Shown here: one piece after another, positions 15,405 to 35,024 of the stretch
Numbering within the stretch: position 1 is the stretch's first letter
Layout: each line of letters opens with the position of its first letter
Assembly: GCA_950097015.1 (NCBI GenBank)
Contig: CATNEN010000029.1
Span: forward strand, 6,634,001-6,698,000
Direction: 5' to 3'
DNA length: 64,000 bases
Source: Macrostomum hystrix
Lineage: Eukaryota; Animalia; Platyhelminthes
Notes under the pieces: generated by a model
Database searches by the model: none
Seen by the model: the letters and a program-made list of their open reading frames with translations, nothing else
What the model was told of the DNA's origin: nothing
Program-made: the position numbers and the translations under genes

Positions 15405-16778
15405 ATGAATACTGACGAGCCGACTGTTCGTCAGGCGAAGGCAGAGTTTCTCAAAGCCTTGGACATTGCGACGCGGAATTTTTCTTCAAGCCTCCACGGC
15501 GGCGGCGTCGGCGGCAACAGCGGCAGCGGTAGCGGCCCTAATCAAACTTCCGCTACTTTGGCGCCAGCCGTTGTTGCCATGACAACCAGTGGCGGCTACC
15601 AGATGCCGACTCCAGCAGCAACGCCGAGTCCACCGCCGACGCCGGTGTTGCTCTACTCGCTCGGCTTCGGGCTCGCCGGGCTGACAGTCCTCGCCCAGCT
15701 GGTCCTGGCCCTGCTGGCCTTCGCGCGGGCCTGCCGAAAGCGACGTCGCCAGCACGCCGACTGCCTCTACGGACTCTGCGCTCACGCTGCCATCGTTGGC
15801 GCCATTCAGGGTGGCTACGTGACCGTCGCCCACACCCTGCTGCTGGCCCGCGGACCCGATGGGTTGGGCGACCCGCTGTGGCGCGTCAACTGCAAGGCCT
15901 ATCTGTTCTGCCGCACCCTTCTGCCTGGCATGTTCCTACACCTGCTGGCCAGCATCGGCGTCGCATTCAAGACAGTCCGGTATCCGGCCAGACGCTGCGG
16001 CGGCGGCTTCTGCGGCCGGGCCGGCAGCCTGGCGGTGCACTGCCTGCCTTGGTTTGTGTGCAGCGGCGCCCTGCTGCCCGCCCTGGTGCTGCACAAGGAC
16101 GCCACCGAGTCCGCTATTCGAGCCGGCAGATGCGCCATGCCTGAGCTCTGGCCCTGGCTGGCCCCGCTGCTGCTGCTTTTCGGCCTGCCGCAGGTGGCGC
16201 TGCTGCTTCTCACATGCCTGCTCTGCGCCTTTCGGCCCTACGAGGCCAGCGCCGATGAAGAAGATGATGACGATGACGACTCCGGAGAGAGGGCCAACAA
16301 CGGCGAAGGCGAGCCTCGACCGCCGGGCTACCTGACGGCGTCAAATAATCTGCACCTGAGGCATCCACAGCAACAGCAACAGCAGCCGCCGCCGCCGCCG
16401 CCGCCGCAGTCCCGCACTCTGCTTCGCGGCCGTCCAATGCGGATCGCCCGCCTGCTGCTGATAGTGCTGAACTGCCTGGAGGCGGCCACCCAGCTGCCCT
16501 ACTCTGTCATCAGCCTGCTGCAGACGGTGCTCCGTAATCGCCAGGCGCGGCACCTCATACCCGACGACACGGTGGACATCGCCTTCTGGCTCCACCTGGC
16601 CTTCTTTCCCGTAGCCAGCGTGTTCCTGGCCGCTCTGGTTGTTCAGCTGGACAAAGCCTACCAGATCACCGAGCGCGACATTCATCAGCGCGGCGGAAAA
16701 GTCGGCGAAGGCATCGGCGTTCGGGGCGGACCGACTGACGAGGTGCTCTACACCGCTAGCATGCTGTCCTCGGTGTAA
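15405..16778 (+). CDS. Single-exon divergent rhodopsin-like (class A) 7TM receptor, orphan, 457 aa
   Basis: Seven hydrophobic segments. N-terminal sequons NFS and NQT. TM3 Cys (NCKAYLF) with an ECL2 Cys (GRCAMP), TM4 Trp (LPWF), TM5 Pro (FGLPQ), TM6 Pro (QLPYS). Acidic/polyQ/polyP third intracellular loop. GC-rich sequence; AATAAA at 17011-17016. Confidence 0.75.
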   Translation: MNTDEPTVRQAKAEFLKALDIATRNFSSSLHGGGVGGNSGSGSGPNQTSATLAPAVVAMTTSGGYQMPTPAATPSPPPTPVLLYSLGFGLAGLTVLAQLVLALLAFARACRKRRRQHADCLYGLCAHAAIVGAIQGGYVTVAHTLLLARGPDGLGDPLWRVNCKAYLFCRTLLPGMFLHLLASIGVAFKTVRYPARRCGGGFCGRAGSLAVHCLPWFVCSGALLPALVLHKDATESAIRAGRCAMPELWPWLAPLLLLFGLPQVALLLLTCLLCAFRPYEASADEEDDDDDDSGERANNGEGEPRPPGYLTASNNLHLRHPQQQQQQPPPPPPPQSRTLLRGRPMRIARLLLIVLNCLEAATQLPYSVISLLQTVLRNRQARHLIPDDTVDIAFWLHLAFFPVASVFLAALVVQLDKAYQITERDIHQRGGKVGEGIGVRGGPTDEVLYTASMLSSV

Positions 16779-17010
16779 TCCGCTTCTGCCTGACCCGTAC
16801 CTCGATCTATCTATGCCGGTGTGTGCTGGCAGATGCAAGCATTCGTTGGGGTGTGTACTCTGAATTGCACTTCAACGACGCGTCCAACCTATTTAGCACA
16901 CCCTACACAGTCCTTCCCCTTGTGTTGTCAGCTACGAAATGCAAAAAAGTATTTAGCGTTTAGCTGTTCAAACGCAAAATTGCACTAGCCATTCAGAAAT
17001 TTGTAAATTT

Positions 17011-17016
17011 AATAAA
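17011..17016 (+). terminator. Candidate polyadenylation signal of the 7TM gene
   Basis: AATAAA about 230 nt after the stop codon, in AT-rich sequence. Confidence 0.45.
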
Positions 17017-17184
17017 GTAATAATTTATCTACTGCAGCTAAATTAATTTTTAAATAGAAAAGTAGTAAACTGGAAAAGGCACGAACAAATTAATGGCTTC
17101 TTCTGTGCTGTCAACCGTCTTCTATTTTATTAGTTTATTAGTTTATTAGTTTTTTAATCAAGGATTCCAGTGGCACATTAGCAC

Positions 17185-17495
17185 ACACAGACACTCACAC
17201 ACAGACACTCACACACAGACACTCACACACACAGACACTCACACACACACTCACACACACAGACACTCACACACAGACACTCACACACAGACACTCACAC
17301 ACAGACACTCACACACAGACACACACACAGACACTCACACACAGACACTCACACACAGACACTCACACACAGACACTCACACACAGACACACACACAGAC
17401 ACTCACACACACAGACACTCACACACAGACACTCACACACAGACACTCACACACAGAGACACTCACACACAGACACTCACACACAGACACTCATT
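17185..17495. repeat. 14-bp ACACAGACACTCAC array
   Basis: Visible tandem array. Confidence 0.9.
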
Positions 17496-17749
17496 GCGTC
17501 TCTCTCTCTGTGTGGCACTCTCGCGTGCGGCCTTGTCTATCGGCTTCTCGCAGTTCCCATGAGAAATAAACGGAGAGAGAATAGAAGAGAATGAGAGGGG
17601 GGGTATGGACGCCGTTCTCCTGCGGTCATCGAATTCCGAGTCTGCTCAACCGGCTCATCGGTCCCTGGGTTTTCCGCGCTAGAAGAACAGGAAGGGAAAC
17701 TGCAGTTCGCCACTGGGCACCCCAGTTCTAGCAAGTTATTAGGGGTGCA

Positions 17750-18300
17750 ACTCATTGATCCACCAATCCACTCATTGATCCACCAATCCACTCATTGATC
17801 CACCAATCCACTCATTGATCCACCAATCCACTCATTGATCCACCAATCCACTCATTGATACACCAATCCACTCATTGATCCACCAATCCACTCATTGATC
17901 CACCAATCCACTCATTGATCCACCAATCCACTCATTGATCCACCAATCCACTCATTGATCCACCAATCCACTCATTGATCCACCAACCCACTCATTGATC
18001 CACCAATCCACTCATTGATCCACCAATCCACTCATTGATACACCAATCCACTCATTGATACACCAATCCACTCATTGATACACCAATCCACTCATTGATA
18101 CACCAATCCACTCATTGATACACCAATTCACTCATTGATCTACAAATCCCTCATCCATCTATCCATTCATTCATCCATCCATCCATCCATCCATCCATCC
18201 ATCCATCCATCCATCCATCCATCCATCCACTCATTGATCCATCCATCCATTCATCAATCTATCTATCCATCAATCCATCCATTCATCAAGCCATCAATCC
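17750..18300. repeat. 20-bp CTCATTGATCCACCAATCCA array followed by (CATC)n
   Basis: Visible tandem arrays. Confidence 0.9.
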
Positions 18301-19953
18301 AGGTTTCCGTCAATCAATCAATCAGTCCATTCATTTAGCAATGCAAAGCAATCTGCCTATCAATCAAGCCATGCTGAATCCAGCACAAGCTAGGCAGCAT
18401 CAACATGATTTTCAAGCTCAAATTTTTCATGTTAGAAACATCCTCATCAATTTTCGTCAGCCGGGGTCGCACAGCTCCCTTTCAAAATGAGGATTTGTCT
18501 GGGCGCGAAAAAATTGAGTTAGCATGGCTTAGCCTGCTTCCTCGGTGCCCCCGAGGAAGACGCCGCAGCTCCATCAGCCTCGCCGCTCAGTCTTTTCTGA
18601 TTTGAGGCGGCCCGACTCATTTTCTTGCGTTGCCTTCTAATTATTTAGGGGCCGCCGGCACAGCGGATGGTCGGGCCGGCTATTTCCTTTGTTGAGCCCT
18701 CTATCAAGCTTTACTAGTCTCTAAGGACAGATTCCGTGTGGGGATTATGGGAAATTCGCCGAGAGAAGGTAAAACGAAATATGCTTTTCCATGCGTTTTG
18801 AGACGCAGTTTACTATGCAGAGGCTTAGGGCTCAGGGCAATGAGAAATATCAGTGATCCTCAAGGAAGCTAAGCTAATTGGCTTTCTGGGATTTCAGGTC
18901 TCAATCTCGGAGGGGAAATCGTTAAAATGACAAGAGGTGAGGCAGTTGAAAGCAGATTACTGAGTTTAGCTGATTATGGGGAAACAGAGAAACACGTGCC
19001 TATAAATTTTGTAGGACATTTCACAGGATATAACAGCGTCACGCTACTGTTAGTAACTCGCTATGTACGAAATGCTATACTTGACAGTAGAAAGACCACG
19101 AAGGCCTTTCAAACGCGCCCATTTTTATTTTTCTGTATCTCCCAATCGCCATGAAAATGCAGAACACGGCCTAAAATGTGTCGCTCAATCCAATGAAACA
19201 ACTTCCAGAATCACGGAACATCAGCATTGTCGAGATATTCAACGATTCTCGTCGGGGGGTGTGTGGTAGTGCATAAATTTTCTGCTCACAGAAAGTCATA
19301 GTGTAGCTATATCGGATATCATTCTTAACTATTTTGGATTGATAAAATTTAAATCTTTTTAATTTTTTTAACCAAAATGGATTCGCCAATATAAGCCAAA
19401 AAAGGTTTTATCCACTGTTGAAGAGCTACAACACTGGAATTTCTTCAACTTATTGTTTTATAAATTATTCCCGCGTTTTAATTTAGGATGTGGGCGCAGG
19501 ACATCATTTGCGAGACAAATTTGTTCAGTTAGAAGCATATTTGTTGGCAGAGCCAAACAGATAACTGGGCAGTGGCCAAGCGGAGTAACGACACGCTTGG
19601 CTACTGTTCATCTGTTTGGTTGAGGCAAATTTGCATTACTGGCGTGGTGAGCAAACAGACATTGCGTGGCAATAATAGCCTCAGCAGTCTGCAACCAGGA
19701 AATTGGCCAGGCATCCCGTGGCACGTTCCCATAATTGAAAGCAATGAGGCGACTGCTTATGGAAGAAATATATAGAAATGTCAGAAGCAACGTCATTATT
19801 AAGTTAGACAAATAGTCAATAGACTAATATACTTGTAAATTTGACGGACGCATTACCTAAATTAGGTAGCTCGATTGGTCAATAAATATTAGTGTGGATA
19901 CCAAAAATATTGCAAATTGCTGAAAATATTTTGAGAACGCATTACGAATTGTG

Positions 19954-22029
19954 ATGGAAGCTGAACAGGGAATAGAAGGTGAGCATCGGTTTGACCCGCT
20001 GCTGTCAGCACAGCTCACCCACTGCATTGAGTCGGACGATGTGCCCCAGATGCTGACGGTGCTCTCTGAAGCTGGACTCACCGTCGAGCACCTCGGCGGA
20101 CATCTCTCCTCCGACACTGACCAGTCGTCGCGACGCACCTGCTGGAGATCATCGCGTCCCGCATCCTCATCGCACAGAGTCAGCTTCAGCAGAGTGCCTC
20201 ACCTGAGCATGCTCATGCAGAGCTCACAGGTGCTGAGCTTCATCTCATCTGAGCATCCTCACCTGCTGGCGACGCTGGATGACTCGGGCTGTGGTGTGCT
20301 GCACTGTCTGGCGATGGCGAGTGTGCTGCGGAGAGAGAGCGCCAGCGGCAGTGGGCAGTCGGCGGCATTTGAGACGTTCCAGACTCGCCTGTTTCGCATC
20401 CTGAGCGATGCCGAGAGTCCGTGCTCGGAGCAGCAGTGAGTAGCCACTGACATTGAGACGTCTGCAGTCTCACCTAAGCTCGCATTCCACATGCAGCCCT
20501 AACGCTCAGCTTCATGCACAATGTCCACCGATTTCAGGTCGACTCAGAGTCTACTGCACTCGCTCTGTCTCATTGAGAACTCGACTGGTCTGAGAGCGCT
20601 CGAGTTCTCTGTCCTCATCGGAGCATACTCCACATTCCAGTGCATCCTCAATGTTGAGGGATACATTCTGACGAAGCAGGTGAGCCACGGCATTCGAGTT
20701 CGCAGCACCTTCGACCTGCGAGAGTACGACCTGATGCAGGGCGATCGACGGGACAAGAATCCCATGCTGATGCTGACGCTGATCTCGACGGAGCAACTGG
20801 AACTTCTCGTGCAGTCGAGGCTTCTCGATTTACAGCTTGTTAGCAAGTGGATCAAAGTCATCGATGACAGCATGTGTTTCATTGTCTCCACAATGAATAT
20901 TGTTCCTCCGGCTGTTGGAAGCGTTTTTGGTGTTTACTCTTTCACATTTATTGTGGTGGCTTCGATGTTACAGGGCGGCTATTACTTGGAGAAGGGATTC
21001 TATGAGTACGGCCGCATTTTGAAGTCCACTTTGGGATCTCAGAGCGTCAATGCTTCAGTAGTGCATCAGTACTGCACGCCGGACCGTATCATTGAGTACC
21101 TACTAAATGCTTCTAATCCAAGCAACATTGCAGTACGCATGACCTCACCCATATCCTGGAGCAACATCTCACGCCTGCAAGCTGTTATGCACAGAAAGTT
21201 GGTTCTGTACTTTCTGTGTCCAAGCTTGTGCGTCCAGTTGCTTGTCATCGTATATAGTCTACTGAAGGATCGCCATTTTTTCTCGCTAAGCTGGATGCCC
21301 CGCTGCACCACATTCGTTGTGCAGTCCAATTTTTACCTGACCGCCTATTTCCTCAACTGTTGCTGCGGTCTCATCTACTGTGCGGTGGCTATGCAGTTTG
21401 AAAATGCACTGGACTGCTCAAGCTTCGTCCTTGGCATTGAGCTGGACAACTGGCGGCTAGCTCTCCTGACAAACATCGCCGAGTGCTCAGCGGCGCTGTT
21501 CGCCTTCTTTGACATTCTGTCTTTGATTGAAGGCTACGAGCTGATTTGGAAGCCCTTAGCCTTTATGGCAATCTGCTTTCGTCAGATGCTGGCCAAGTTC
21601 ATTCTGGTTCTGCCGCTGCTGCTTTGTTGGAGTTACCTCATATTTGGTACAATGTTCTACCTGACCGACATAGCAGGCCAGGAGTTCAAAAAGTCCAGCG
21701 ACATTTTCTACTCGCCTCTACGCATTATGATGAACATGGCTAGCCTGCCGCAAAGACCGACAGTATGCATTCTGCACTCGATCTTTGCGCTGATTGTCAG
21801 CGTCAACATTGCCAACTTCATCATCGCATTCATATCGAACGCTTTCAACGAGGTTGCTTCGAAATTCGACACCCTGTTTCCCCTATTCGGACTGAACCGG
21901 TCGCTCAGAGGATGGAGGCTCTACGCCTTCCTGCTCAGATTGTTTCACAGCAGATCCCGTTCGGGTGCCCAATCGCAGACCAGGTGGGTTGTCAAGACGT
22001 GGAGCCTGAAGCAACCAGGTGCACTGTGA
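19954..22029 (+). CDS. TRPV-like channel copy 1 (ankyrin + 6TM). Two in-frame ORFs (19954-20439, 20521-22029) separated by a broken intron allele
   Basis: DDSGCGVLHCLA resembles the TRPV ankyrin motif DSRGNTVLHALV. ENSTGLRALEFSVLIG..FQCI and FDLREYD match the TRPV linker. S1-S6 hydrophobic pattern with pore helix FYSPLRI and S6 NFIIAFISNAF. Donor GTGAGT at 20436, but the acceptor is CAT instead of CAG and there is an in-frame TAA at 20500. Confidence 0.7.
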
Positions 22030-22280
22030 AAAATTTTGGCAGCCGGAAGATAGGACAAGCTCGAGTACTTGATTAGAGATCTTTTGGGGTGCAGTCTGCA
22101 TCAGATTGATGACAGTGACTACCAAAACAGTCATTTCTGACTTTTTTCCCAATGTTAAATCTATCTACTGAAATATTATTTAAAGTTAGTAAATGGCCCA
22201 TAGGGATTTCTTGCGGGAAAATTGCTTCGCGAAATAAATAAACTCAGTTGGTTCAGATTTGTCGTCGAAAGCCTACCAGC

Positions 22281-22510
22281 TTATACATTTATTGCGCGGC
22301 GCATCTGAAGGCTGCGTACGGCTGTTCAGTCCAGGGACTGGGGGACGCCACACCCACCCTCAATTACCCGAGATAGTGCTGGTAGCCATTTAACAGCTGT
22401 GGGAACTGAAACAATGAAGAGTCAAATGTCTTGCTAAATGACGCAAATTGTTGGGAATCGAACCTCAGACCTTCAAGTCGAGAGTCCGACGCTCCGCTAG
22501 GCTACAGTCC
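22281..22510 (-). mobile_element. tRNA-derived SINE with CORE-like central domain
   Basis: Minus strand: A-box TAGCCTAGCGG, B-box GTTCGATTCC, then GCAAGACATTTGAC...TCAGTTCCCACAGCTGTTAAATGG, resembling the MIR/CORE consensus (GCAAGTCACTTAAC...TCAGTTTCCTCATCTGTAAAATGG, recalled from memory). Ends GCGCAATAAATGTATAA. Confidence 0.7.
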
Positions 22511-23091
22511 GAATCTCGTCAGTGCGCAACAGCCGATAACTGCATTAAACACTAAGTTTAAGAATGTTGACTGCGCAAATTTAAATTGATGCAAAAATTA
22601 CATCAGAGCACAACTCAGAAAGCAAAACGAAAGTATGAGTCTGAGATAAAGTAAGAACTATCAGATTAAACCGAACAAGCATAGCTCTAAATTAAATTAA
22701 TCATTATCCAAAGCTTTGGTTGACACTAACCAAACGTTTGCGCTTCTATTAATTAACATCAGGCAGTGCCTGGCATAAATCAGTTTGAGATAATTACAAC
22801 AGCCCGCAATATTCAATCTGGCATGCCGACAGGAAGTTTGTTCGCCAGAGGCCAGGCATCCCGTGTCACGTCCCATAATTGAAAACAATGAGGCGACTGG
22901 TTATGAAAGAAATATATGGAAATAGCTGAAGCAACGTCATTATTAATTTAGACAAAAAGTCAATCTACTAATATAGATTTGACGGACGCATTACCTAAAT
23001 TAGGTAGCTCGATTGGTCAATAAATATTAGTGTGGATACCAAAAATATTGCAAATTGCTGAAAATATTTTGAGAACGCATTACGAATTGTG

Positions 23092-25206
23092 ATGGAAGCT
23101 GAACAGGGAATAGAAGGTGAGCATCGGTTTGACCCGCTGCTGTCAGCACAGCTCACCCACTGCATCGAGTCCGACGATGTGCCCCAGATGCTGACGGTGC
23201 TCTCTGAAGCTGGACTCACCGTCGAGCACCTCGGCGGACATCTCTCCTCCGACACTGACCAGTCGTCGCGACGCACCTGCTGGAGATCATCGCGTCCCGC
23301 ATCCTCATCGCACAGAGTCAGCTTCAGCAGAGTGCCTCACCTGAGCATGCTCATGCAGAGCTCACAGGTGCTGAGCTTCATCTCAGCTGAGCATCCTCAC
23401 CTGCTGACGACGCTGGATGACTCGGGCTGTGGTGTGCTGCACTGTCTGGCGATGGCGAGTGTGCTGCGGAGAGAGAGCGCCAGCGGCAGTGGGCAGTCGG
23501 CGGCATTTGAGACGTTCCAGACTCGCCTGTTTCGCATCCTGAGCGATGCCGAGAGTCCGTGCTCGGAGCAGCAGTGAGTAGCCATTGTCATTGAGACCTC
23601 TGCAGTCTCACCTAAGCTCGCATTCCACAGGCAGCCTCAACGCTCAGCTTCATGCACAATGTCCACCGATTTCAGGTCGACTCAGAGTCTACTGCACTCG
23701 CTCTGTCTCATTGAGAACTCGACTGGTCTGAGAGCGCTCGAGTTCTCTGTCCTCATCGGAGCATACTCCACATTCCAGTGCATCCTCAATGTTGAGGGAT
23801 ACATTCTGACAAAGCAGGTGAGCCACGGCATTCGAGTTCGCAGCACCTTCGACCTGCGAGAGTACGACCTGATGCAGGGCGATCGACGGGACAAGAATCC
23901 CATGCTGATGCTGACGCTGATCTCGACGGAGCAGGCGGACTCGCTGGTTCAGTCGAAGCTACTCGGCTCTCCCATTGTTAAGAAGTGGATCAATACAATT
24001 GAAGCCGACATGCGCTCAACCGGGATGTTAAAGAGCGTCTTCATTCCCACTGTCGTTGGTTGTCTGAGTCCCATGACATCCGCTTTCGTAGGTGTGACGA
24101 GTCTTGTTCAATTCGGTCACTTGTTGGAGATGGGCTACAATGAGTACGTTAGCATCCTGAGGTTACAGCTTTCTGCCTCGGCCCACATGGCTTTAAATGT
24201 CACGGTTGAGGAGGCCGAGATGTTTGTGAAATTTCGCTGCTCCACCAGAGCGGTTTTGACTTTCCTGTCCAACCGAACGAATCCTGCCAACAGGGCGGTG
24301 ATCAGCACATCACCGATTTATCAGACCAACGTCAGACGTTTTGAAGTGTTCGAGTCACCTCTAATTGTAACTATGGTGGTAGCCGTCTACCTGCTTATTC
24401 AGATGGTAATTATTTTGCACAGGTCGATATTAGGCTGCTGCACTCATCGTTGGACACCACGCCGGTGGAACTACCTCGTGCAGAGTAGTTTCTATGACAA
24501 CGCATTTTTATTAAGCTTCATCTGCGGTCTGCTGGTAGTGGTTTCTCGATTCCTGATGATGTCAGAGCTGAACTGCTCAGACTACATCCTGGGGCCCGAA
24601 GTTGATAACAATCGCCTACGTGCTCTCGCGACTGCCTCAGAGTGTGCAGCTGTGCTGTTCGTGTTCTTCAATCTGTTCAGCTTCTTTGAGGTCTACGAGA
24701 CGGTCCTGAAACATGTTGCCTTCATGAGCATCTGCTTTCGTTGGATGCTGGTCAAGTTTGTTCACGTGCTGCCGCTGCTTCTGTTCTGGGCCTACCTTGT
24801 ATTCGGAACAATGTTTTACATGGTCGACCTCAAGGGCCACGAGTTCAAATCGCAGTTTGATGTTTTCTACTCGCCTCTGCGCCTAATCACCAACTTGGCT
24901 CAGCTGTCACCTGGCGTCCCGACAGTTTTCCTGCACTCGCTGTTTGTTCTAGTCGTGACCATCAACATCAGCAATCTAGTGATTGCGTACATTCTGAATG
25001 CCTTCAAAGATGTGGCAGCCAAGTTCGACGTAGTTTACGACCTGTCCAGGCTGAATTGCGCATTGAAGACTTGGCAGTTCTATTCTTTCCTGACCAGACT
25101 GGGGCGCAGCTGTTCCAGTGATCAGGCTTCAGGCTATCTCCTGGCTGTTTGGAACCTGCGACAACCAATGAGCTGGCCGAACTCTGCTCAAATACACAGG
25201 CATTGA
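23092..25206 (+). CDS. TRPV-like channel copy 2, intact: exons 23092-23573 and 23631-25206
   Basis: 57-nt GTGAGT...CCACAG intron (23574-23630, phase 2) joins the two ORFs in frame as ...SEQQ-QPQRSASCT-MSTDF... Same TRPV motifs as copy 1. Confidence 0.85.
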
Positions 25207-25319
25207 GGCTTGCTCAACCATTCAGAGCATACGCATACGTACGGCAGCTCGCTTGCATCACAAGGATTGACTAAAACAGTGAACGGTTGTTGTTCCGTCA
25301 TCCTTTGTTATAATCTGTG

Positions 25320-25500
25320 CACGATGAGTATTTAGCTCTAACCGAAGGTCAGGAGTTCAAATCTCAGCCCAAGGGAAGCGATTGGGGAAGAAATTTGGGG
25401 GGAGGAATGTGGTGGCCTCCAGTCAAAACCCAGTCCATGGACTAAACAGTAGTACACACTGGCCTTACATGAGACCTAAAAGAGTTAGTTGTAATTTCTA
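25320..25500 (+). mobile_element. Degenerate SINE related in its 3' part to the 22.3-kb SINE
   Basis: B-box-like GAGTTCAAATC at 25353-25363. CCCAGTCCATGGACTAAACAG (25429-25449) matches CCCAGTCCCTGGACTGAACAG in the 22.3-kb element. Confidence 0.5.
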
Positions 25501-25664
25501 TCTTCTATTTTATTACAATGATACGCTCTCTGGTATGACATTATACTCGAAATGTCGAAAATTATTTTCCATCAAAATTATAATAGTAAATATAACATCC
25601 ATACACTAAAGAGTGCGTGCTTGCACAGAAAATTTTTCTCGAAATTCGAGGCGCATTAAAAAGT

Positions 25665-25935
25665 TTATTTTTTGGTTTTTCCTAAACTTTTAACAATCGC
25701 CAAATAGAACATGAAAACCATATGGTTAAAGTGCTTATCCGAGTAGTAATTTGATATATAGCCTGCTGACACTCCAACCTCTTCTGCCAGCTCTTGGCAT
25801 GTCCGTCGCCGATCATCATCCAGGAGCTCTTGGACTTTCTTCATCACTTTCTCGTTGGTGGCAGTCATTGGCCGTCCAGAACTATCATTGTCTTCGATGC
25901 TTTTTCTCCCTTTGGTGCGTTGCAGCCAAAAGCTT
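25665..25935 (-). mobile_element. Mariner (Tc1/mariner) transposase remnant, DNA-binding region only
   Basis: GRKSIEDNDSSGRPMTATNEKVMKKVQELLDDDRRRTCQELAEEVGVSAG matches the mariner linker/second HTH pattern GRESxEDxxRSGRP...VxxLxxxDRRxTxRELAEEVGIS. No DD34D catalytic domain visible. Confidence 0.75.
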
Positions 25936-26267
25936 AGCAAAGCCGTTGAGCATTTAGTTAATCTCTGTTTACCTCGCAGGAGAGCTAACATGATAGAATG
26001 ACCAATCGACCAATGTTGACCAAGTTAAACAAATAGGCTATATGAAACTGACTGTTTCAAATTATTATTGCGAGCATGACTCGTCAAACTGTGCCCAATA
26101 ATCTGAAGCCGAGTAGCTGATAAAAGAATCACTACCCGGGTCATTGGCAACAGCAGTGCCTTGCTGGACAGGTGATAAGAGAGGAGGAAAGCCTGATTAG
26201 ACGACATCATTTGAAATTTCTTCTAGTGAGCTAAATCGAAGCCCACAGCACTGGCCCATTGTCTGCC

Positions 26268-28386
26268 ATGAGAGTATCGGACATCGGAACAGGGACGAAT
26301 GAAGACTTCAGCAATTGGCGCTTCCATCCGCTGCTGTCAGCACAGCTCACCCACTGCATTGAGTCGGACGATGTGCCCCAGATGCTGACGGTGCTCTCTG
26401 AAGCTGGACTCACCGTCGAGCACCTCGGCGGACATCTCTCCTCCGACACTGACCAGTCGTCGCGACGCACCTGTTGGAGATCATCGCGTCCCGCATCCTC
26501 ATCGCACAGAGTCAGCTTCAGCAGAGTGCCTCACCTGAGCATGCTCATGCAGAGCTCACAGGTGCTGAGCTTCATCTCAGCTGAGCATCCTCACCTGCTG
26601 ACGACGCTGGATGACTCGGGCTGTGGTGTGCTGCACTGTCTGGCGATGGCGAGTGTGCTGCGGAGAGAGAGCGCCAGCGGCAGTGGGCAGTCGGCGGCAT
26701 TTGAGACGTTCCAGACTCGCCTGTTTCGCATCCTGAGCGATGCCGAGAGTCCGTGCTCGGAGCAGCAGTGAGTAGCCACTGACATTGAGACGTCTGCAGT
26801 CTCACCTAAGCTCGCATTCCACATGCAGCCCTAACGCTCAGCTTCATGCACAATGTCCACCGATTTCAGGTCGACTCAGAGTCTACTGCACTCGCTCTGT
26901 CTCATTGAGAACTCGACTGGTCTGAGAGCGCTCGAGTTCTCTGTCCTCATCGGAGCATACTCCACATTCCAGTGCATCCTCAATGTTGAGGGATACATTC
27001 TGACAAAGCAGGTGAGCCACGGCATTCGAGTTCGCAGCACCTTCGACCTGCGAGAGTACGACCTGATGCAGGGCGATCGACGGGACAAGAATCCCATGCT
27101 GATGCTGACGCTGATCTCGACGGAGCAGGCGGACTCGCTAGTTCAGTCGAGACTGCTTTGTTCTCCGATAATTAAGAAGTGGATCAAGGAGGTGATTCAG
27201 GACATGAATTGCACATTTTCGGTAAAGCGCTGCTTTCACTCCACATTCTGCGCCACGTTTAGCCCGATAAGTGTACGATTTTTGGCCATTGCTTCCATGC
27301 TGCGGATTGGCTACGAGTACGAGTCTGGGTTCTTCAGGTACGCCGAGTTCCTCAAGTCCCGGATGAACTCCAGCGGCTCGGAATCCTCCTCGGCATACAA
27401 CGCCTCTGAACTCAGCCGGCTTTGCAGTTCCTCCAGTCTGCAGCATTTCCTAACGGACGAATTGCAGCCCGAAAACATGGCCCTTGTTGTGTCATCTCCC
27501 ATCGGAACGGGCTTTTTTAGTCGCCATGATATCGTTTCGTTTGCAGTCTCCGTTCCCACAAACATAGCCAGCTTCGCATTCGTGCAGCTGATTATTGTGC
27601 TTTATAATTTCCTGCGAGACCTGCAACTCACTCGCTGCGATTGGATGCGAGCCATCCGCGGCAGGAGCTACCTGGTGCAGAGCAGCTTCTACAACCGCGC
27701 TATGGGCGTCTGCTTCTGCTCGTCACTTCTGCTCGAGGTAGTCTTTATGCACTTTGACTCAGTTCTAGACTGCACTGCATATGTCAGCGGCAACGTGCAG
27801 CGCAGTGCTAGCTTGTCGCTGATGGTTCTACTGTTCGAGTGCAACGCTGTGCTGTTCGTCATGCTGAATATGTGCAGCTTGATTGACGCCTATGAGATGG
27901 TAGGCCATCAGGTGGCATTTCTCAACATCTGTTTTCGCCGCATTCTGTCGGGATTCCTTCCTACGCTGCTTCTGCTGCTAATCTGGGCCTACTTGGTGTT
28001 CGGGACTCTGTTCTACATTGCTGACTTCAAGGGCGAAGCGTTCAGCGGGCCGCAGGACGTGTTCTACACTCCATTGCGCATTCTGGTCAACACAGCCAAC
28101 CTGCCGCACAATCTGCCTACTGCCGGTGCTACACTCGCTCTTTGCACTGGCGGTGAGCATCAACGTGCAGAACTTTTTCATCGCCACCCTGTCCAAGGAG
28201 TTCGCCACGGCCGCCGAAATGTTTGACGCCATTTACCAGCTGTCCCTGCTCAACTGCTCTATGCGCACCTGGAGACTGTACGCCTTCCTGACCAGGTGCT
28301 GGCGGTTCTGCTGTAACAGGCGTGGGGTGGGGCGCCACACCTGGGTTCTTCGTGTCTGGAGTCTGAAAATGTCTCATTACAAATAG
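26268..28386 (+). pseudogene. TRPV-like channel copy 3, apparently disrupted (broken intron allele plus a +1 frameshift near 28125)
   Basis: Same intron allele as copy 1 (acceptor CAT, in-frame TAA). The homologous C-terminus (VLHSLFALAVSINVQNFFIA...WRLY) continues in the frame of ORF 28018-28386 after an extra base in GCCGGTG. The frameshift could be an assembly error. Confidence 0.65.
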
Positions 28387-28624
28387 CTACTCAAAATTTA
28401 TGCCAGAAAACAGCAATCTATAAAATTTCCATTACGAATTTTCGCTGACGATTGTGTTAAAGGTGTTGATTTTGTATATTTTGCGAATAAAAAAAGGCTT
28501 GGAGTTTCTGAAGTTAATTCTCTCTACGAGTATTAGGCCTCGATTCCCAAGTTCCAGGAACTGACCATTGCAATACGAGCTCAACAGTGTTTTTTTTCGA
28601 ACGAATTAAAGATGCAAAATAGTG

Positions 28625-28905
28625 AATAATATTAATAATAATAATATTGCTAGAGGGCTGCGGGAAATTGGTGGGCAGTTCGGCCCATTTCCGCTGACTC
28701 CTCAGCACACACGCACACAGGTGTGTACACTTACTCTGACCTTCTCATTGTCAGGCGAAGTACACTTTCACTGTGCCTTGGAGTTGGCCCTTTGGGGCGT
28801 AATTTGCACGAAAAGCAACTGCCCCAAATGAATTTGGCCTCTCCGCGGAATCGAGCTCATGGACGTTGTTGCGAGAAGCAAATGCGTTAGACCGCTCTGC
28901 CGCTT
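28625..28905 (-). mobile_element. tRNA-derived SINE with (ATT)n tail
   Basis: Minus strand: A-box-like GGCAGAGCGGTCTAACGC, degenerate B-box GAGCTCGATTCC, non-tRNA body, ending ATTATTATTATTAATATTATT. Confidence 0.6.
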
Positions 28906-29298
28906 ATCCCTCACACAGGAGTGAAGCTTAATCAATAAATTTTTGTTGCTTTCTTATTTCGGTCAGTGCTTAAGCTAAAAAATCAGCATCTAGCTTATCT
29001 TACGTCAACAACAATTAATTTTACAATTGATAAACTGACTAGGCAAACAACTGCTTGGTGAGCGAAACCACATGCAAGCTTCAATTCTGCAGATTAGGGC
29101 TGGCCAACAAACCAGGCTCATGCAAACAAGCTGTGGTCAGGTCGAAGACCTAATCATTCTAATGCTTGTTGCATAAACTCCAACCAACCCAGACCAAGCA
29201 AACAGGATGCCTTGGACGTACAAATTTGAGGCGTTTGATGGATAATTAGATTGGATAGAGCCAATACTGTTATGCCCATTGCATGACTGTGCAAGATT

Positions 29299-31389
29299 AT
29301 GGCACAGCCATCGGATCATAGAGTCTTTGACCAGCTGCTGTCTGCACAGCTGACCCACTGCATCGAGTCCGACGATGTGCCCCAGATGCTGACGGTGCTC
29401 TCTGAAGCTGGACTCACCGTCGAGCACCTCGGCGGACATCTCTCCTCCGACACTGACCAGTCGTCGCGACGCACCTGCTGGAGATCATCGCGTCCCGCAT
29501 CCTCATCGCACAGAGTCAGCTTCAGCAGAGTGCCTCACCTGAGCATGCTCATGCAGAGCTCACAGGTGCTGAGCTTCATCTCAGCTGAGCATCCTCACCT
29601 GCTGACGACGCTGGATGACTCGGGCTGTGGTGTGCTGCACTGTCTGGCGATGGCGAGTGTGCTGCGGAGAGAGAGCGCCAGCGGCAGTGGGCAGTCGGCG
29701 GCATTTGAGACGTTCCAAACTCGCCTGTTTCGCATCCTGAGCGATGCCGAGAGTCCGTGCTCGGAGCAGCAGTGAGTAGCCATTGTCATTGAGACCTCTG
29801 CAGTCTCACCTAAGCTCGCATTCCACAGGCAGCCTCAACGCTCAGCTTCATGCACAATGTCCACCGATTTCAGGTCGACTCAGAGTCTACTGCACTCGCT
29901 CTGTCTCATTGAGAACTCGACTGGTCTGAGAGCGCTCGAGTTCTCTGTCCTCATCGGAGCATACTCCACATTCCAGTGCATCCTCAATGTTGAGGGATAC
30001 ATTCTGACGAAGCAGGTGAGCCACGGCATTCGAGTTCGCAGCACCTTCGACCTGCGAGAGTACGACCTGATGCAGGGCGATCGACGGGACAAGAATCCCA
30101 TGCTGATGCTGACTCTGATCTCGACGGAGCAGGCGGACTCGCTGGTTCAGTCGAGACTGCTTTGTTCTCCGATAATTAAGAAGTGGATAAAGGCTGTCAA
30201 TAATGAAATGGAGTTTCCGATGTACTTACAAAAGGCGGGCCTAGTGTTTTTTTCGCTATTGTTCTCACCGATTTCCTTCGCATTCGAGCAGCCTGCCTCC
30301 ATGCTCCGCACCGGCTATCAGTTGGAGACAGGCTTCCTAGAGTACTCAACCTACCTGAGGGCTGAGCTGTGGCCCAACAGGTCCATGCATAACGCATCTA
30401 CCATTGAGTTGGAGATTCGCAGGAACTGTCAGGCGCATCAGGTGCGCGGCTTCCTCATGGCGGACTCTCACCCAGCCAATCGGCAGGCGTTGCTGAACTC
30501 GCCCGTGTCCTCGCAGGCGGTCACTCGCAAGAGCATCATAGTGAATTCAGTGAACGTTCTGATCATCCTGGGCATATTCCAGGCCTTCAGACTGGCTACA
30601 ATCGTTCTCAGCTTCGTCAAAGACTGGCAGTTCTCGACCTGCAAATGGATGCCAGCTCGCCGCTCGAAGCGAATCGTTCAGACAAAGTTTTTTGACGTCG
30701 CCTACGGGCTTTGCTTCTGCACGGGTGTGCTGTACATCACACTGGCTGTTCAGTTTGACAACTACTTAGACTGCTCAGACTATCTGCTTGGCGTGTCAAG
30801 TGACCGCTCAGCGCTGACACGGTTAGTCCATTGCGCCGAGTGCAGCGCCGCTCTGTACTTCTTTTTCAACATGTTCGGCCTATTCGAAGCGTACGAGACG
30901 GTTGTGAAACAGGCCGCCTTCCTCAGCATCTGCTTTCGCAAGATGCTGGTCAGCTTTCTGCTGGTGCTGCCGCTGCTGCTGCTGTGGGCCTACGCTGTGC
31001 TCGGAAACCTGCTGTACATGACCGACTACAAGGGCCAGGAGTTCAGCTCGCACCTGAGCGTCTGGTACTCGCCGCTGCGCCTGATTGTCAACATGGCGAG
31101 CGTGCCGCATACTCCGTCCAGCTGCCTGCTCCACACGCTGTTTATTCTCACAGTCAGCATTGGCGTTCAAAACTTCATCGTCGGCTACATTGTTAACGCG
31201 TTCAAGGACGTCGCTTCGAAATTCGACATCGTATTTTATCTGAGTAGGTTGGCTTCCGCTATGAAAACCTGGCGCCTGTACCCGGGACTGCTCAGACTGA
31301 CCAGGCTGCTCAGTAGTTCTCTTGGCATGCGACGCGGTGAAAATTTAATTCGTGTCTGGAGCCTAAGAACTAAATTAGCTAAGCTCTGA
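29299..31389 (+). CDS. TRPV-like channel copy 4, intact: exons 29299-29771 and 29829-31389
   Basis: 57-nt GTGAGT...CCACAG intron (29772-29828) joins the ORFs in frame. Ankyrin-like motif, linker and 6TM region present. AATAAA at 31572-31577. Confidence 0.85.
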
Positions 31390-31869
31390 GGTGATCTGGT
31401 AACTGGGAACAGAATATCGATAAACTGAACTGGTGAAAGGCTGTGACTGAATTCTTACTGGATGTTGTTCGCAGCGTATGATCAGCTGGTGCCACCCGTT
31501 GAAGGTCCAGAAACTCCGTCCAGGTGAAGGCAGTAGGCACGGAAGGCTGAGAAGATGATGCAGACACATTTAATAAACTATCAGATGAACTCTAAACACT
31601 TGACAAAGCTCTACTGAGGTGCAGTGCTGATCGGCATGCAAGGGTATCCACCCTTTGACCCTTCGAATGATCTCCTTGATATTCTGCGGTTAAAAATTTA
31701 TGCCAAGCTATTAGTTTACGCTTAAATTGTAGCTCCTATCTTTCGTAAAAGCGCCATTTTTAGTTTTTTTATTCTTTAAATGTTTTCATTCCTTTAAATC
31801 TTCCCACATCGTCCTGCCTCTTCCCCATTCCCCATACCCTTCCCCATTTCTACCGTTTCTGCACTTTTT

Positions 31870-33110
31870 CCAATCTTATCTCAACCCCAATACCATCTCT
31901 ACCCCAATCACATCTCTTTCCCAATCACATCTCTTACCCATTTCTGAATCCTTCCCAATCCCATCTCTTCCCCATTTCTGAATCCTTCCCAATCCCATCT
32001 CTTCCCCATTTCTGAATCCTTCCCAATCCCATCTCTTTCCCAATCCCATTTCTTTCCCAATCCCTTCTCTTTCCCAATCCCATCTCTTTCCCAATCCCAT
32101 TTCTTTCCCAATCCCATTTCTTTCCGAGTCCCATCTCTTTCCCAATCCCATTTCTTTCCCAATCCCATTTCTTTCCCAATCCCATTTCTTTCCCAATCCC
32201 ATCTCTTTCCCAATCCCATCTCTTCCCCATTTCTGAATCCTTCCCAATCACATCTCTTCCCCATTTCTGAATCCTTCCCAATCCCATCTCTTCCCCATTT
32301 CTGAATCCTTCCCAATCCCATCTCTTCCCCATTTCTGAATCCTTCCCAATCCCATCTCTTCCCCATTTCTGAATCCTTCCCAATCCCATCTCTTTCCCAA
32401 TCCCATTTCTTTCCCAATCCCTTCTCTTTCCCAATCCCATCTCTTTCCCAATCCCATTTCTTTCCCAATCCCATTTCTTTCCCAATCCCATCTCTTTCCC
32501 AATCCCATTTCTTTCCCAATCCCATTTCTTTCCCAATCCCATTTCTTTCCCAATCCCATCTCTTTCCCAATCCCATCTCTTCCCCATTTCTGAATCCTTC
32601 CCAATCCCATCTCTTCCCCATTTCTGAATCCTTCCCAATCCCATCTCTTCCCCATTTCTGAATCCTTCCCAATCCCATCTCTTTCCCAATCCCATTTCTT
32701 TCCCAATCCCTTCTCTTTCCCAATCCCATCTCTTTCCCAATCCCATTTCTTTCCCAATCCCATTTCTTTCCGAGTCCCATCTCTTTCCCAATCCCATTTC
32801 TTTCCCAATCCCATTTCTTTCCCAATCCCATTTCTTTCCCAATCCCATCTCTTTCCCAATCCCATTTCTTTCCCAATCCCATCTCTTTCCCAATCCCATC
32901 TCTTTCCGAGTCCCATCTTTTCCCCAATGCCATCTCTTTCCCTAATCCCATCTCTTTCCCAATCCCATCTCTTTCCGAGTCCCATCTTTTCCCCAATGCC
33001 ATTTCTTTCCCTAATCCCATTTCTTTCCCAATCCCATTTCTTTCCCAATCCCATTTCTTTCCCAATCCCATTTCTTCCCCAATCCCATCTCTTCCTCAAT
33101 CCCATCTTTT
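31870..33110. repeat. 17-bp TCCCAATCCCATYTCTT minisatellite
   Basis: Visible tandem array with a longer variant unit. Confidence 0.95.
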
Positions 33111-33714
33111 CCATATATCTGAATCTTCCCTAATCCCGTGTGGGAAAAGAATCAAGGCCAATGAAAAAAGGCTTCCACGTTGGAAACATACAATTCGATC
33201 ATGGGCACTAATTTCAATCGGGTGCGGAGTAAATTTATTTATTTACAGCAGAATCTAAAACACAAGCAACAAGGAGAGTCGGTCATAATAAGCGCGCAGC
33301 ATTTTAAATTACGAGCCGTGGATGAAAAAGATGAGAATTTCTGATTTGCTAAAGCATTACAATTATTGCCTCCCGGCAATATGAATTGTCGTTTGCAGCT
33401 ATGAACAATCAAATAAAAACAGCATAACGTAGCGGTAAAAATATTATTTAGCAGGTAAATAGCATCGTATAGAACTGTGTATTATATATGTTTAAATATA
33501 GATTTGCAAATCAATTTGAACTATAGAATAGAATAATAAAAATCGAATGACCGAGAGAACATAATTTTTAACAGACCGTTTGCTCAGCAACTATTTTGTT
33601 TTGCTCTCGTGGTCTTCAAAAATAACTAAAATAGGAGATATTCGGAACGGGATTTCTTGAAACGTGATTTTTAATTATTTTTTTAATAGGATCGGGATAG
33701 AGTTGGGATTCCAT

Positions 33715-34200
33715 CGACTTGGGATTTCACCGATTAGGGATTTTATCTTTTTGGGATTTTATCTTTTTGGGATTTCATCGATTTAGGGATTTCATCATGT
33801 TGGGATTTTATCTATTAGGTATTTTATCTATTAGGGATTTTATCTATTAGGGATTTTATCAATTTGGGATTTCATCGATTTAGGGATTTCATCATGTTGG
33901 GATTTTATCTATTAGGGATTTTATCTATTAGGGATTTTATCTATTTGGGATTTTATCTTTTTGGGATTTTATCTATTACGGATTTTATCTATTATGGATT
34001 TAATCTTTTAAGGATTTTATCAATTTGGGATTTCATCGATTAGGGATTTTATCTATTAGGGATTTTATCTATTAGGGATTTTATCTATTAGGGATTTTAT
34101 CTATTAAGGATTTTATCAATTAGTGATTTTTTCTATTAGGTATTTAATCGATTAAAGATTTAATCAGTTATGGATTTCATCGATTAGGGATTTTGTCAAT
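33715..34200. repeat. 16-bp GGGATTTTATCTATTA array
   Basis: Visible tandem array downstream of Post2. Confidence 0.9.
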
Positions 34201-34675
34201 TCGTCATTTTCTCCTCATAAATTTAGGTTAAAAGATAGTTGCTAATTTCACAGAGAGTTAGCAATGAGGTCTCGGTCCCACGAAATTCTGCCTACAGATC
34301 CGGAAGCGTTTACAAAGCAATCAGTGCATAAAGAGACGAGACATAACTTAACTCCATTGCCCACTGCATTCACCTGTCCAATTAGCATTCGCATATGGGA
34401 AAGTGTTGAAAACGCATAAGAGGAAGAAAACTTTCTCTCAAAGACGGCTGCAAATAGGTGACAAAAAATTTCTGGAGACGAATGACACCGTAAGGTATTG
34501 GGCTAGGAGGTCACCTTGCATCATTTGTGCATCATTTATGCATGTTGTATATGCGAGCTAAATATATATATTGAGAGACAGAATTGTTGAGGAAAAAATC
34601 CCAGTAGTTTTAGTTTCTTAAAGATTGTGCCTCATCTGTACAGTGTGAATTTCCGGGTGCTTCCAGAGAGGATTG

Positions 34676-34954
34676 TCAAGAGCAAAGTGCTCCAGCGTGT
34701 GCGGCAATGGAAGGATCCTTCAAGTCCATGACCTGCTGGTGGAGTTCCTCCTGCTTGAAGGTGCCCAACTGTTCCATGTGGCCCATCAGCATGTTGCCAT
34801 GGTGATGGTGCATTGCCGGGTGAAGCTGCTGTTGATGCTGGTGGTGTGTCATGGCAGGGCTGACCGACTCGGCGGAGACATTGTCCTCCGATGAGCGGGT
34901 TCGAGTCTGCAGCTTCTTCTTCTTCATCCGGCGATTTTGAAACCAAACTTTCAC
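34676..34954 (-). CDS. Post2: Post2 exon 3, homeodomain helix 3 and C-terminus
   Basis: Acceptor CCCAG, then VKVWFQNRRMKKKKLQ... to TGA at 34678-34676. Phase-0 intron between homeodomain positions 44 and 45. Confidence 0.95.
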   Translation of the reverse strand: MKVWFQNRRMKKKKLQTRTRSSEDNVSAESVSPAMTHHQHQQQLHPAMHHHHGNMLMGHMEQLGTFKQEELHQQVMDLKDPSIAAHAGALCS

Positions 34955-35024
34955 CTGGGGAATAGTGAGTGAATTCCTATTGGTTAGCCAAATCTAAACT
35001 GGATAATTTGGGGATCTGAGGCGA

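What the first reader, a model, noticed from the sequence alone, without database searches (positions are those of the whole stretch)
19996..30190. SNPs in the shared block give incompatible groupings, a signature of recurrent interlocus gene conversion
Seen: copies 1+3 vs 2+4 at TGCATTGAGTCG/TGCATCGAGTCC and at the intron alleles. Copies 1+4 vs 2+3 at CTGACG/CTGACA(AAGCAG). Copy 1 alone at ATCTCATCT and CTGGCG. Copies 1+2 share the 5' flank and N-terminus (identical from about 19840/22979, looser to about 19705/22850). Copies 3+4 share a longer 3' tract through CTGCTTTGTTCTCCGATAATTAAGAAGTGGAT. Tract ends differ per copy and fall inside exons, not at splice sites. Inference: no single duplication tree fits these patterns, so patchwork conversion is the likely mechanism.
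Basis: partly seen in the sequence, partly recalled or inferred. Interest (0 to 1): 0.75.

Follow-up and report, generated by a model that had tools for sequence, protein, structure and literature searches.

The report
Repeated gene conversion in flatworm channel genes
Four neighbouring, very old copies of a flatworm TRPV-like ion-channel gene keep about 800 bases of their front part almost identical by repeatedly copying it onto one another, which is a clean example of a well-known process.

Summary
Observation confirmed.

The window holds four tandem two-exon genes. They encode ankyrin-plus-TRPV-fold channel proteins of a Macrostomum-like flatworm.

A block of about 800 bp is 98-100% identical in all four copies. 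It covers most of exon 1, the 102-nt intron and the first 86 codons of exon 2. The rest of exon 2 is about 50% identical, with saturated synonymous divergence: dS 1.4-2.2 against at most 0.03 in the block. Only DNA copying between paralogs explains this step.

Several events are needed:
- The core groups the copies as 1+3 versus 2+4 (8 sites).
- The 5' flank joins copies 1 and 2, in two age tiers.
- The 3' edges are staggered: copy 1 leaves first, then copy 2, then copies 3 and 4 part.
- Split types are segregated along the sequence (permutation p about 1e-4).

The incompatibility inside the core rests on one CpG-type synonymous site and is not significant alone (p=0.23).

Eight of the 10 exonic SNPs are synonymous, which argues against random consensus error (p=4e-4). 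Reads were not available, so mis-assignment of real variants is untested.

Two other clusters of the same family repeat the design. The scan has already noted many conversion mosaics in other gene families of this genome. This is a known kind of event.

The parts
19954..22029 (+). Copy 1 gene: exon 1 19954-20435, intron 20436-20537 (GT..AG, phase 2), exon 2 20538-22029
   Evidence: ORFs. Splice sites read. Exon-2 product folds as a TRPV-like channel.
23092..25206 (+). Copy 2 gene: exon 1 23092-23573, intron 23574-23675, exon 2 23676-25206
   Evidence: offset +3138 from copy 1 within the block.
26268..28386 (+). Copy 3 gene: own first codons, intron 26768-26869, exon 2 from 26870. A one-base frame shift at about 28120-28140 splits the last ~85 codons into another frame
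29299..31389 (+). Copy 4 gene: own first codons, intron 29772-29873, exon 2 29874-31389
   Evidence: offset +9336.
19998..20795 (+). Homogenised block in copy 1 (798 bp). It covers the ankyrin-like exon 1 from codon 15, the intron, and exon-2 codons 1-86 (last ankyrin repeat plus linker hairpin)
23136..23956 (+). Block in copy 2. It extends 23 bp further 3' than in copy 1, shared with copies 3 and 4
26330..27184 (+). Block in copy 3. It extends a further 34 bp 3', shared only with copy 4
29334..30188 (+). Block in copy 4. The first 20 bp carry 3 mismatches, so the youngest tract starts at about 29353
19706..19997 (+). 5' flank tract shared by copies 1 and 2 only (partner at 22851-23135). 100% identical from 19840, about 90% from 19706 to 19839. 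Found nowhere else in the genome
20436..20537 (+). Intron of copy 1 (allele A, also in copy 3). Copies 2 and 4 carry allele B, which differs at 6 of 102 positions. Donor and acceptor are identical in both alleles

Best explanation
Four anciently duplicated, tandem TRPV-like channel genes undergo repeated, region-restricted interlocus (non-allelic) gene conversion.

Homologous repair copies stretches of a few hundred bases from one paralog onto another. The copying is confined to the part that is still similar enough to pair: the ankyrin and linker coding part plus its intron. This keeps about 800 bp at 98-100% identity.

The transmembrane half escaped long ago. It is now about 50% identical, too diverged to be invaded, so the boundary maintains itself. 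Selection for different pore or sensor halves may also help hold it.

Shown here: the step in synonymous and intron divergence, the mosaic of groupings, and the staggered, tiered tract ends.

Inferred: at least three recent events, namely a 1-2 flank tract, a 1-3 core tract and a 2-4 core tract. Older events are also inferred: the distal 1-2 flank tier, the 3' extensions shared by 3+4 and by 2+3+4, and the original homogenisation of all four. Continuous conversion since the duplications is inferred as well.
For: - Divergence step. In the block part of exon 2, dS is at most 0.03 and dN is 0. In the variable half, pS is 0.64-0.71 (dS 1.4-2.2) and dN is 0.59-0.71. Nucleotide identity there is 48-52%. 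The intron is 94-100% identical.
- Age of the genes. The variable halves form an unresolved star with a paralog on another contig, with branches of about 1 change per site.
- Segment differences. Over 20028-20500: d13=3 and d24=1, against d12=10, d14=11, d23=9 and d34=10. Over 20796-20818, copy 1 has 9 differences from copies 2, 3 and 4, which have 0-1 among themselves. Over 20819-20852, copies 3 and 4 are identical while copy 2 has 9 differences and copy 1 has 13.
- 5' flank. Copies 1 and 2 are identical over 19840-19997 and about 90% identical over 19706-19839. The flank is unique to these two places. Differences between copies 1 and 2 are 0/188 in the flank against 10/473 in the core (Fisher p=0.034).
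- Spatial order. Split types are segregated along the block plus edges (permutation p about 1e-4).
- The SNPs look real. Eight of 10 exonic SNPs are synonymous (p=4e-4 against random error).
- Replication. Two other clusters of the family, on contigs C32 and C30, have their own 640-770 bp 5' blocks at 96-100% identity followed by 35-55%. These include inverted gene pairs and show tiers of identity.
Against: - Inside the core, only one site (20673, a synonymous CpG-type transition) conflicts with 13|24. The core-only test gives p=0.23.
- There is no clear GC3 excess of the kind biased conversion leaves. The block has GC3 0.73 against 0.62-0.71 in the variable halves. This is significant only for copies 1 and 2, and unconverted paralogs show a similar small N-terminal excess.
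- No reads, population data or orthologous cluster could be examined. The phase of the SNPs and true concerted evolution across species are therefore untested.
Confidence: 0.8

Rival explanations
1. One homogenising event, or one wave from a single donor, was followed by ordinary divergence. On this view the conflicting groupings come from recurrent mutation and chance.
For: Within the core, 8 informative sites fit one split and only one site (20673) conflicts. That site is a transition in a CG context. The core-only permutation gives p=0.23.
Against: One tree cannot make copies 1 and 2 identical over 158 bp of mostly non-coding flank while their cores differ by 2%. It also cannot make copies 3 and 4 identical over 20819-20852 while they carry different core haplotypes. 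The 0% and 10% tiers in the 1-2 flank need two dates.
Confidence: 0.08
2. The SNP groupings are an assembly product. Real variants could have been assigned to the wrong copy during polishing, or the consensus could switch between two haplotypes, each of which is internally homogeneous.
For: The intron sites lie 300-450 bp from the nearest copy-specific sequence, where short-read polishing is least reliable. The alternating A,B,A,B order could arise from haplotype switches. No reads were available.
Against: - The six intron sites are in perfect association with 20028/20034, which lie 30 bp from the copy-specific edges of copies 3 and 4.
- Eight of 10 exonic SNPs are synonymous, so they are real variants.
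- No alternative haplotig of the block exists in the assembly.
- A 3-kb repeat period is spanned by single long reads in an assembly of 42 contigs (inference).
- This rival would change only the fine pattern. It would not change the conclusion that the block is converted.
Confidence: 0.08
3. Unequal crossing-over within the array, rather than non-reciprocal conversion, produced the chimeric 5'/3' combinations.
For: This is a tandem array with a 3.0-3.2 kb period and a shared recombinogenic block. Crossing-over and conversion share intermediates (established knowledge).
Against: A duplicating crossover would leave two similar variable halves, and none exist: all pairs are 48-52% identical. A deleting crossover cannot give two genes the same flank. 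In the C30 and C32 clusters, inverted gene pairs share blocks, and there crossing-over would invert the intervening DNA rather than homogenise the blocks.
Confidence: 0.03
4. The genes are recent duplicates. The block shows their true age, and the transmembrane half diverged fast under positive selection. Alternatively, the block is simply conserved by purifying selection.
For: The block encodes the region most conserved across the family.
Against: Synonymous sites in the variable half are saturated, and its dN/dS is about 0.3. Intergenic DNA and 3' ends cannot be aligned. The intron is as conserved as the exons. Against paralog L008, the same protein region has dS of about 1.6.
Confidence: 0.01

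Closest known systems
Regional gene conversion in clustered protocadherin variable exons of teleosts (fugu: PMC1852091; zebrafish and human work by Noonan et al. 2004 as cited there)
   Same: In both cases tandem paralogs share one part of a large exon at more than 99% nucleotide identity while the other part stays old and diverse. In both, synonymous sites are homogenised, so repeated regional conversion is inferred. Each subcluster has its own homogenised sequence.
   Different: Here the genes are complete two-exon TRPV-like channel genes, not variable first exons spliced to shared constant exons. The tract includes an intron. The GC3 excess used as support in fugu is not clear here. The arrays have only 3-4 members.
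Classical partial conversion between tandem duplicates, such as the human fetal globin genes HBG1/HBG2 or the RHD/RHCE and opsin pairs (from general knowledge, not checked here)
   Same: A 5' tract including intron sequence is kept near-identical between neighbours, with a sharp 3' boundary and older divergence beyond it.
   Different: Those pairs are young and similar throughout. Here the unconverted half is saturated, so the contrast is far stronger, and four copies exchange in a network.
TRPV-type (ankyrin plus six-helix) cation channels
   Same: The exon-2 model (pLDDT 90.7) matches TRPV1/3/5/6 and Nanchung-Inactive chains over about 510-540 columns (E about 1e-6, TM about 0.5). Ankyrin repeat proteins lead the match list for the exon-1 model. 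Family relatives pass the Pfam Ion_trans cut-off.
   Different: Sequence identity to solved TRPVs is only 11-15%. The window's own proteins have no Pfam hit. The proteins are short (about 655 residues) with few ankyrin repeats. Channel activity is untested.
Other conversion mosaics noted by this scan in the same genome (lectin, EGFR, NACHT, SLC23, TEP, ZAP-like and HELZ2-like paralogs)
   Same: Old neighbouring paralogs with sharply bounded near-identical blocks.
   Different: They are different gene families. Those notes were not re-tested here.

Membership tests
Interlocus gene conversion / concerted evolution of tandem paralogs | A paralogous tract far less diverged than adjoining paralogous sequence, at silent and intron sites as well | tested here: met
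   dS is at most 0.03 in the block against 1.4-2.2 in the variable half. The intron is 94-100% identical.
Interlocus gene conversion / concerted evolution of tandem paralogs | Mosaic phylogenetic signal: different segments support different groupings, and the segments are spatially clustered | tested here: met
   The order along the sequence is 1=2 flank, 13|24 core, 1|234, then 34|2. Permutation p is about 1e-4 for block plus edges. For the core alone the result is inconclusive (p=0.23).
Interlocus gene conversion / concerted evolution of tandem paralogs | Paralogs within a species are more alike in the tract than orthologs between species | not testable with these tools
   No ortholog of the cluster was found. 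The nearest Macrostomum lignano proteins are orthologs of paralog L011 at 60% identity.
Interlocus gene conversion / concerted evolution of tandem paralogs | Raised GC3 in the converted tract (GC-biased conversion) | tested here: inconclusive
   Block GC3 is 0.73 against 0.62-0.71 in the variable halves. The p-values are 0.005-0.01 for copies 1 and 2 and 0.28-0.73 for copies 3 and 4. Control paralogs show a similar small excess.
Interlocus gene conversion / concerted evolution of tandem paralogs | Non-reciprocal transfer without a change of copy number | not testable with these tools
   This needs pedigrees or population samples. The absence of duplicated variable halves argues indirectly against crossover products.
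TRPV-like channels (TRP superfamily) | Six-helix voltage-sensor-like plus pore fold with a TRP helix, preceded by a linker hairpin | tested here: met
   The top 50 Foldseek PDB hits for the AF2 model are all TRPV1/3/5/6 or Nanchung-Inactive chains (E about 1e-6).
TRPV-like channels (TRP superfamily) | Significant sequence match to Ion_trans or TRP profiles | tested here: inconclusive
   The window proteins have no Pfam hit. A family profile against the PDB hits the S6 region of TRPM4, Iav and crTRP1 only at E 0.36-2.5. Relatives P0003, P0004 and P0040 pass the PF00520 cut-off.
TRPV-like channels (TRP superfamily) | N-terminal ankyrin repeat domain | tested here: inconclusive
   The exon-1 model (pLDDT 83) is built of helix pairs. 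Most of its best matches are ankyrin repeat proteins, but only at E 0.16-0.65. Relatives have sub-threshold Ank hits and a UniRef name of ANK_REP_REGION.

The most novel reading that the evidence does not exclude
The constant-front, variable-back build may be a selected design of this flatworm channel family and not just a by-product of recombination. In at least three separate clusters the cytosolic ankyrin and linker domain is kept identical among neighbours by conversion, always up to the cytosol/membrane junction. The promoters and the transmembrane, pore and C-terminal halves are kept different. Identical assembly or regulatory domains would let cluster members co-assemble or share a partner, while the membrane halves supply a repertoire of sensor and pore properties.
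Probability: 0.15. Interest if true: 0.6.

Novelty: new member of a known kind. Interest (0 to 1): 0.35.

Why it matters
This is a very clean, quantifiable case of region-restricted concerted evolution. Silent divergence jumps more than 50-fold within one exon. Tract ends are staggered and show age tiers. The pattern is replicated in three clusters of one uncharacterised TRPV-like family.

The case is useful in three ways:
- Trees built from the N-terminal part of these genes would be badly misleading.
- It adds to the evidence that mosaic conversion is pervasive in this flatworm genome.
- It gives a natural system for asking what sets conversion boundaries: a homology threshold or selection at a domain junction.

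It does not reveal a new mechanism.

Tried and rejected
- Two-gene-unit duplication as the source of 13|24. Rejected, because the variable halves of 1-3 and 2-4 are no closer than other pairs (dN 0.69 and 0.66 against 0.59-0.71) and the tree is a star.
- The block or the 1-2 flank as a mobile element. Rejected, because the block occurs only four times and the flank only twice in the genome. No terminal repeats were found in the spacers.
- Biased-conversion GC3 signal. Inconclusive.
- Recombination test on core SNPs alone. Not significant.
- Searches for relatives and domains. Pfam gave nothing on the window's exon products. phmmer against the PDB gave nothing. The word-indexed protein search gave nothing. 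The profile search gave 359 distant relatives but no ortholog of the cluster.
No independent contigs or transcripts could be fetched, and no read-level check was possible.
- tRNA and Rfam scans of 15000-35000 found nothing.
- Literature searches found no report on gene conversion in Macrostomum.
- The spliced (joined) protein was never built, searched or folded. Exons were handled separately by reference.
Full report
**What is there**

The window is G000:C29:6634001-6698000 of a 220-Mb, 42-contig eukaryotic assembly. An earlier scan note calls it a Macrostomum-type flatworm. In support, the nearest named database proteins to a paralog of the genes studied here come from Macrostomum lignano, at 60% identity.

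Between 19954 and 31389 lie four head-to-tail genes, spaced 3138, 3194 and 3004 bp apart. Each gene has three parts:
- an exon 1 of about 160 codons;
- a 102-nt GT..AG phase-2 intron;
- an exon 2 of about 500 codons.

Copy 3 has a one-base frame shift at about 28120-28140, which puts its last ~85 codons in another frame.

I treated the exons separately by reference throughout. The joined spliced protein was not built, searched or folded.

**What the genes encode**

Pfam finds nothing in the exon products. phmmer against the PDB and the word-indexed protein search also find nothing.

A profile built from the four genes plus paralogs from elsewhere in the genome finds 359 relatives of about 600 residues. 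Some of these pass the Pfam Ion_trans cut-off and have weak ankyrin hits. One is an uncharacterised Lineus protein.

An AlphaFold model of copy 1 exon 2 (pLDDT 90.7) matches only TRPV1/3/5/6 and Nanchung-Inactive chains among its top 50 Foldseek hits. The matches cover about 510-540 columns at E about 1e-6. The exon-1 model (pLDDT 83) is made of helix pairs. Its best matches are mostly ankyrin repeat proteins, but they are weak, at E 0.16-0.65.

So these are short ankyrin-plus-TRPV-fold channel-like proteins of an undescribed spiralian family.

**The observation**

With constant offsets the copies align without gaps over 19998-20795, with 4-14 pairwise differences in 798 bp.
- 13|24 at 20028, 20034 and six intron sites (20447-20500);
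- 14|23 at 20673;
- copy 1 alone at 20248 and 20269.

The flank and edge claims also hold. Copies 1 and 2 share the 5' flank: 100% identity from 19840, about 90% from 19706 to 19839, and nothing beyond. At the 3' side copy 1 departs at 20796, copy 2 at about 20819, and copies 3 and 4 part at about 20853. All ends lie inside exons.

**Why it is conversion**

In the block part of exon 2, dS is at most 0.03 and dN is 0. In the remainder of the same exon, pS is 0.64-0.71 (dS 1.4-2.2), dN is 0.59-0.71 and nucleotide identity is 48-52%.

The intron is as conserved as the exons, and the spacers cannot be aligned. The variable halves form an unresolved star with a paralog on another contig, with branches of about one change per site.

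The genes are therefore ancient and the block is young. Purifying selection cannot explain this, and neither can recent duplication followed by fast divergence.

The block and the 1-2 flank are not mobile elements. They have only four and two copies in the genome respectively.

Pairing between sequences as diverged as the variable halves is mechanistically implausible (established knowledge of homology requirements). The block must therefore have been kept similar continuously. This is itself an argument for recurrent events, though it is an inference.

**How many events**

Differences per segment are:
- 20028-20500: d13=3 and d24=1, against 9-11 for the other pairs. This gives ((1,3),(2,4)).
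- 20501-20795: a near-star, with 0-2 differences.
- 20796-20818: copy 1 against copies 2, 3 and 4.
- 20819-20852: copies 3 and 4 identical, copy 2 with 9 differences and copy 1 with 13.

In the flank, copies 1 and 2 are identical where their cores differ by 2% (0/188 against 10/473, Fisher p=0.034). That flank also has a second tier at about 10% divergence.

Informative sites run in the order 13|24 (8 sites), 14|23 (1 site), 12|34 (6 sites). Permuting their order gives p of about 1e-4.

At least three recent tracts are needed: the 1-2 flank, the 1-3 core and the 2-4 core. Older ones are needed as well: the distal flank tier, the 3' extensions, and the first homogenisation.

Duplication of a two-gene unit cannot explain 13|24, because the variable halves of 1-3 and 2-4 are not closer than other pairs.

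**Weak points**

Inside the core the only conflict with 13|24 is 20673, a synonymous ACG/ACA change in a CG context. The core-only test gives p=0.23.

GC3 gives no clear sign of biased conversion.

Mis-assignment of real variants, or haplotype switching in the consensus, therefore remains possible for the fine pattern.

Random consensus error is unlikely. Eight of the 10 exonic SNPs are synonymous, against an expected 25% (p=4e-4). The intron alleles are also in perfect association with variants 30 bp from copy-specific sequence.

**Replication elsewhere in the genome**

Two other clusters of the same family show the same build.

On C32, three genes, two of them inverted relative to the third, share a 5' block of about 760 bp at 99-100% identity. 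This is followed by 40-55% identity. A 3' block is 99-100% identical between two of the genes and 68-96% identical to the third.

On C30, three genes share a 5' block of about 640 bp at 96-100% identity, with an older tier in one copy, followed by 35-60%.

The 3' ends of the blocks map to residues of copy 1 exon 2 as follows: about 77 (C30), 86-105 (this window) and about 126 (C32). All lie at the junction between the cytosolic linker and the first membrane helix.

The scan's own notes list many conversion mosaics in other gene families of this genome. I did not re-test them.

**Comparison with known cases**

The closest described analogue is regional gene conversion in teleost protocadherin clusters. 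There, paralogs share more than 99% identical parts of the variable exon next to old, diverse parts. Repeated regional conversion was inferred on the same silent-site logic (PMC1852091).

This case differs in gene family, in including an intron, in lacking a clear GC3 signal, and in the extreme age of the unconverted half.

**Verdict**

This is a new member of a known kind of event. It is of moderate interest, mainly as a clean, replicated example. It also raises a possible link between conversion boundaries and a domain junction.

Noticed in passing
L031:3369-5324 (-), L031:8114-10000 (+), L033:659-2476 (-) = G000:C32:2587368-2596475: Three further genes of the same family share a 5' block of about 760 bp at 99-100% identity, including inverted pairs. 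Two of them share a 3' block of 552 bp at 99.3% identity. The middle of the genes is only 40-55% identical.
   Followed up: partly
L032:3522-4169, L032:6895-7543, L034:5450-6103 = G000:C30:2067521-2080103: A third cluster of the family has a 5' block of about 640 bp that is 99.4% identical between a direct and an inverted gene and 96% identical to a third gene. The rest is 35-60% identical. One gene (P) has no in-frame ATG before the block.
   Followed up: partly
window 28120-28140: Copy 3 has a one-base frame shift just before the last membrane helix. Its converted block nevertheless carries only one private, synonymous change. It may be a very recent pseudogene still exchanging sequence, or the shift may be an assembly indel.
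   Followed up: partly
window 20499-20500 and partners at 23637-23638, 26831-26832, 29835-29836: Intron allele A (copies 1 and 3) has a CTAAC branch-point-like motif 38 nt before the acceptor. Allele B (copies 2 and 4) reads TCAAC at that place. Donor, acceptor and pyrimidine tract are identical in both, so neither allele can be called broken from sequence alone.
   Followed up: partly
window 17126-18368, 31764-33100, 33689-33995: Long minisatellite arrays with periods of 14, 20, 17 and 16 nt flank the gene cluster on both sides. The 17-nt array reads as a long repetitive open frame on the minus strand.
   Followed up: no
window 25665-25991 (-): A short ORF sits in the spacer between copies 2 and 3. 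It has a weak, sub-threshold HTH_32 match (E 6e-4) and may be a transposase remnant.
   Followed up: partly
L008:949-3054 (G000:C39:7303564-7305669): The closest paralog outside the cluster is an intronless 701-codon gene. At the position of the cluster's intron it has extra coding sequence. The intron may therefore have been lost or gained, or may be read through, in this family.
   Followed up: no
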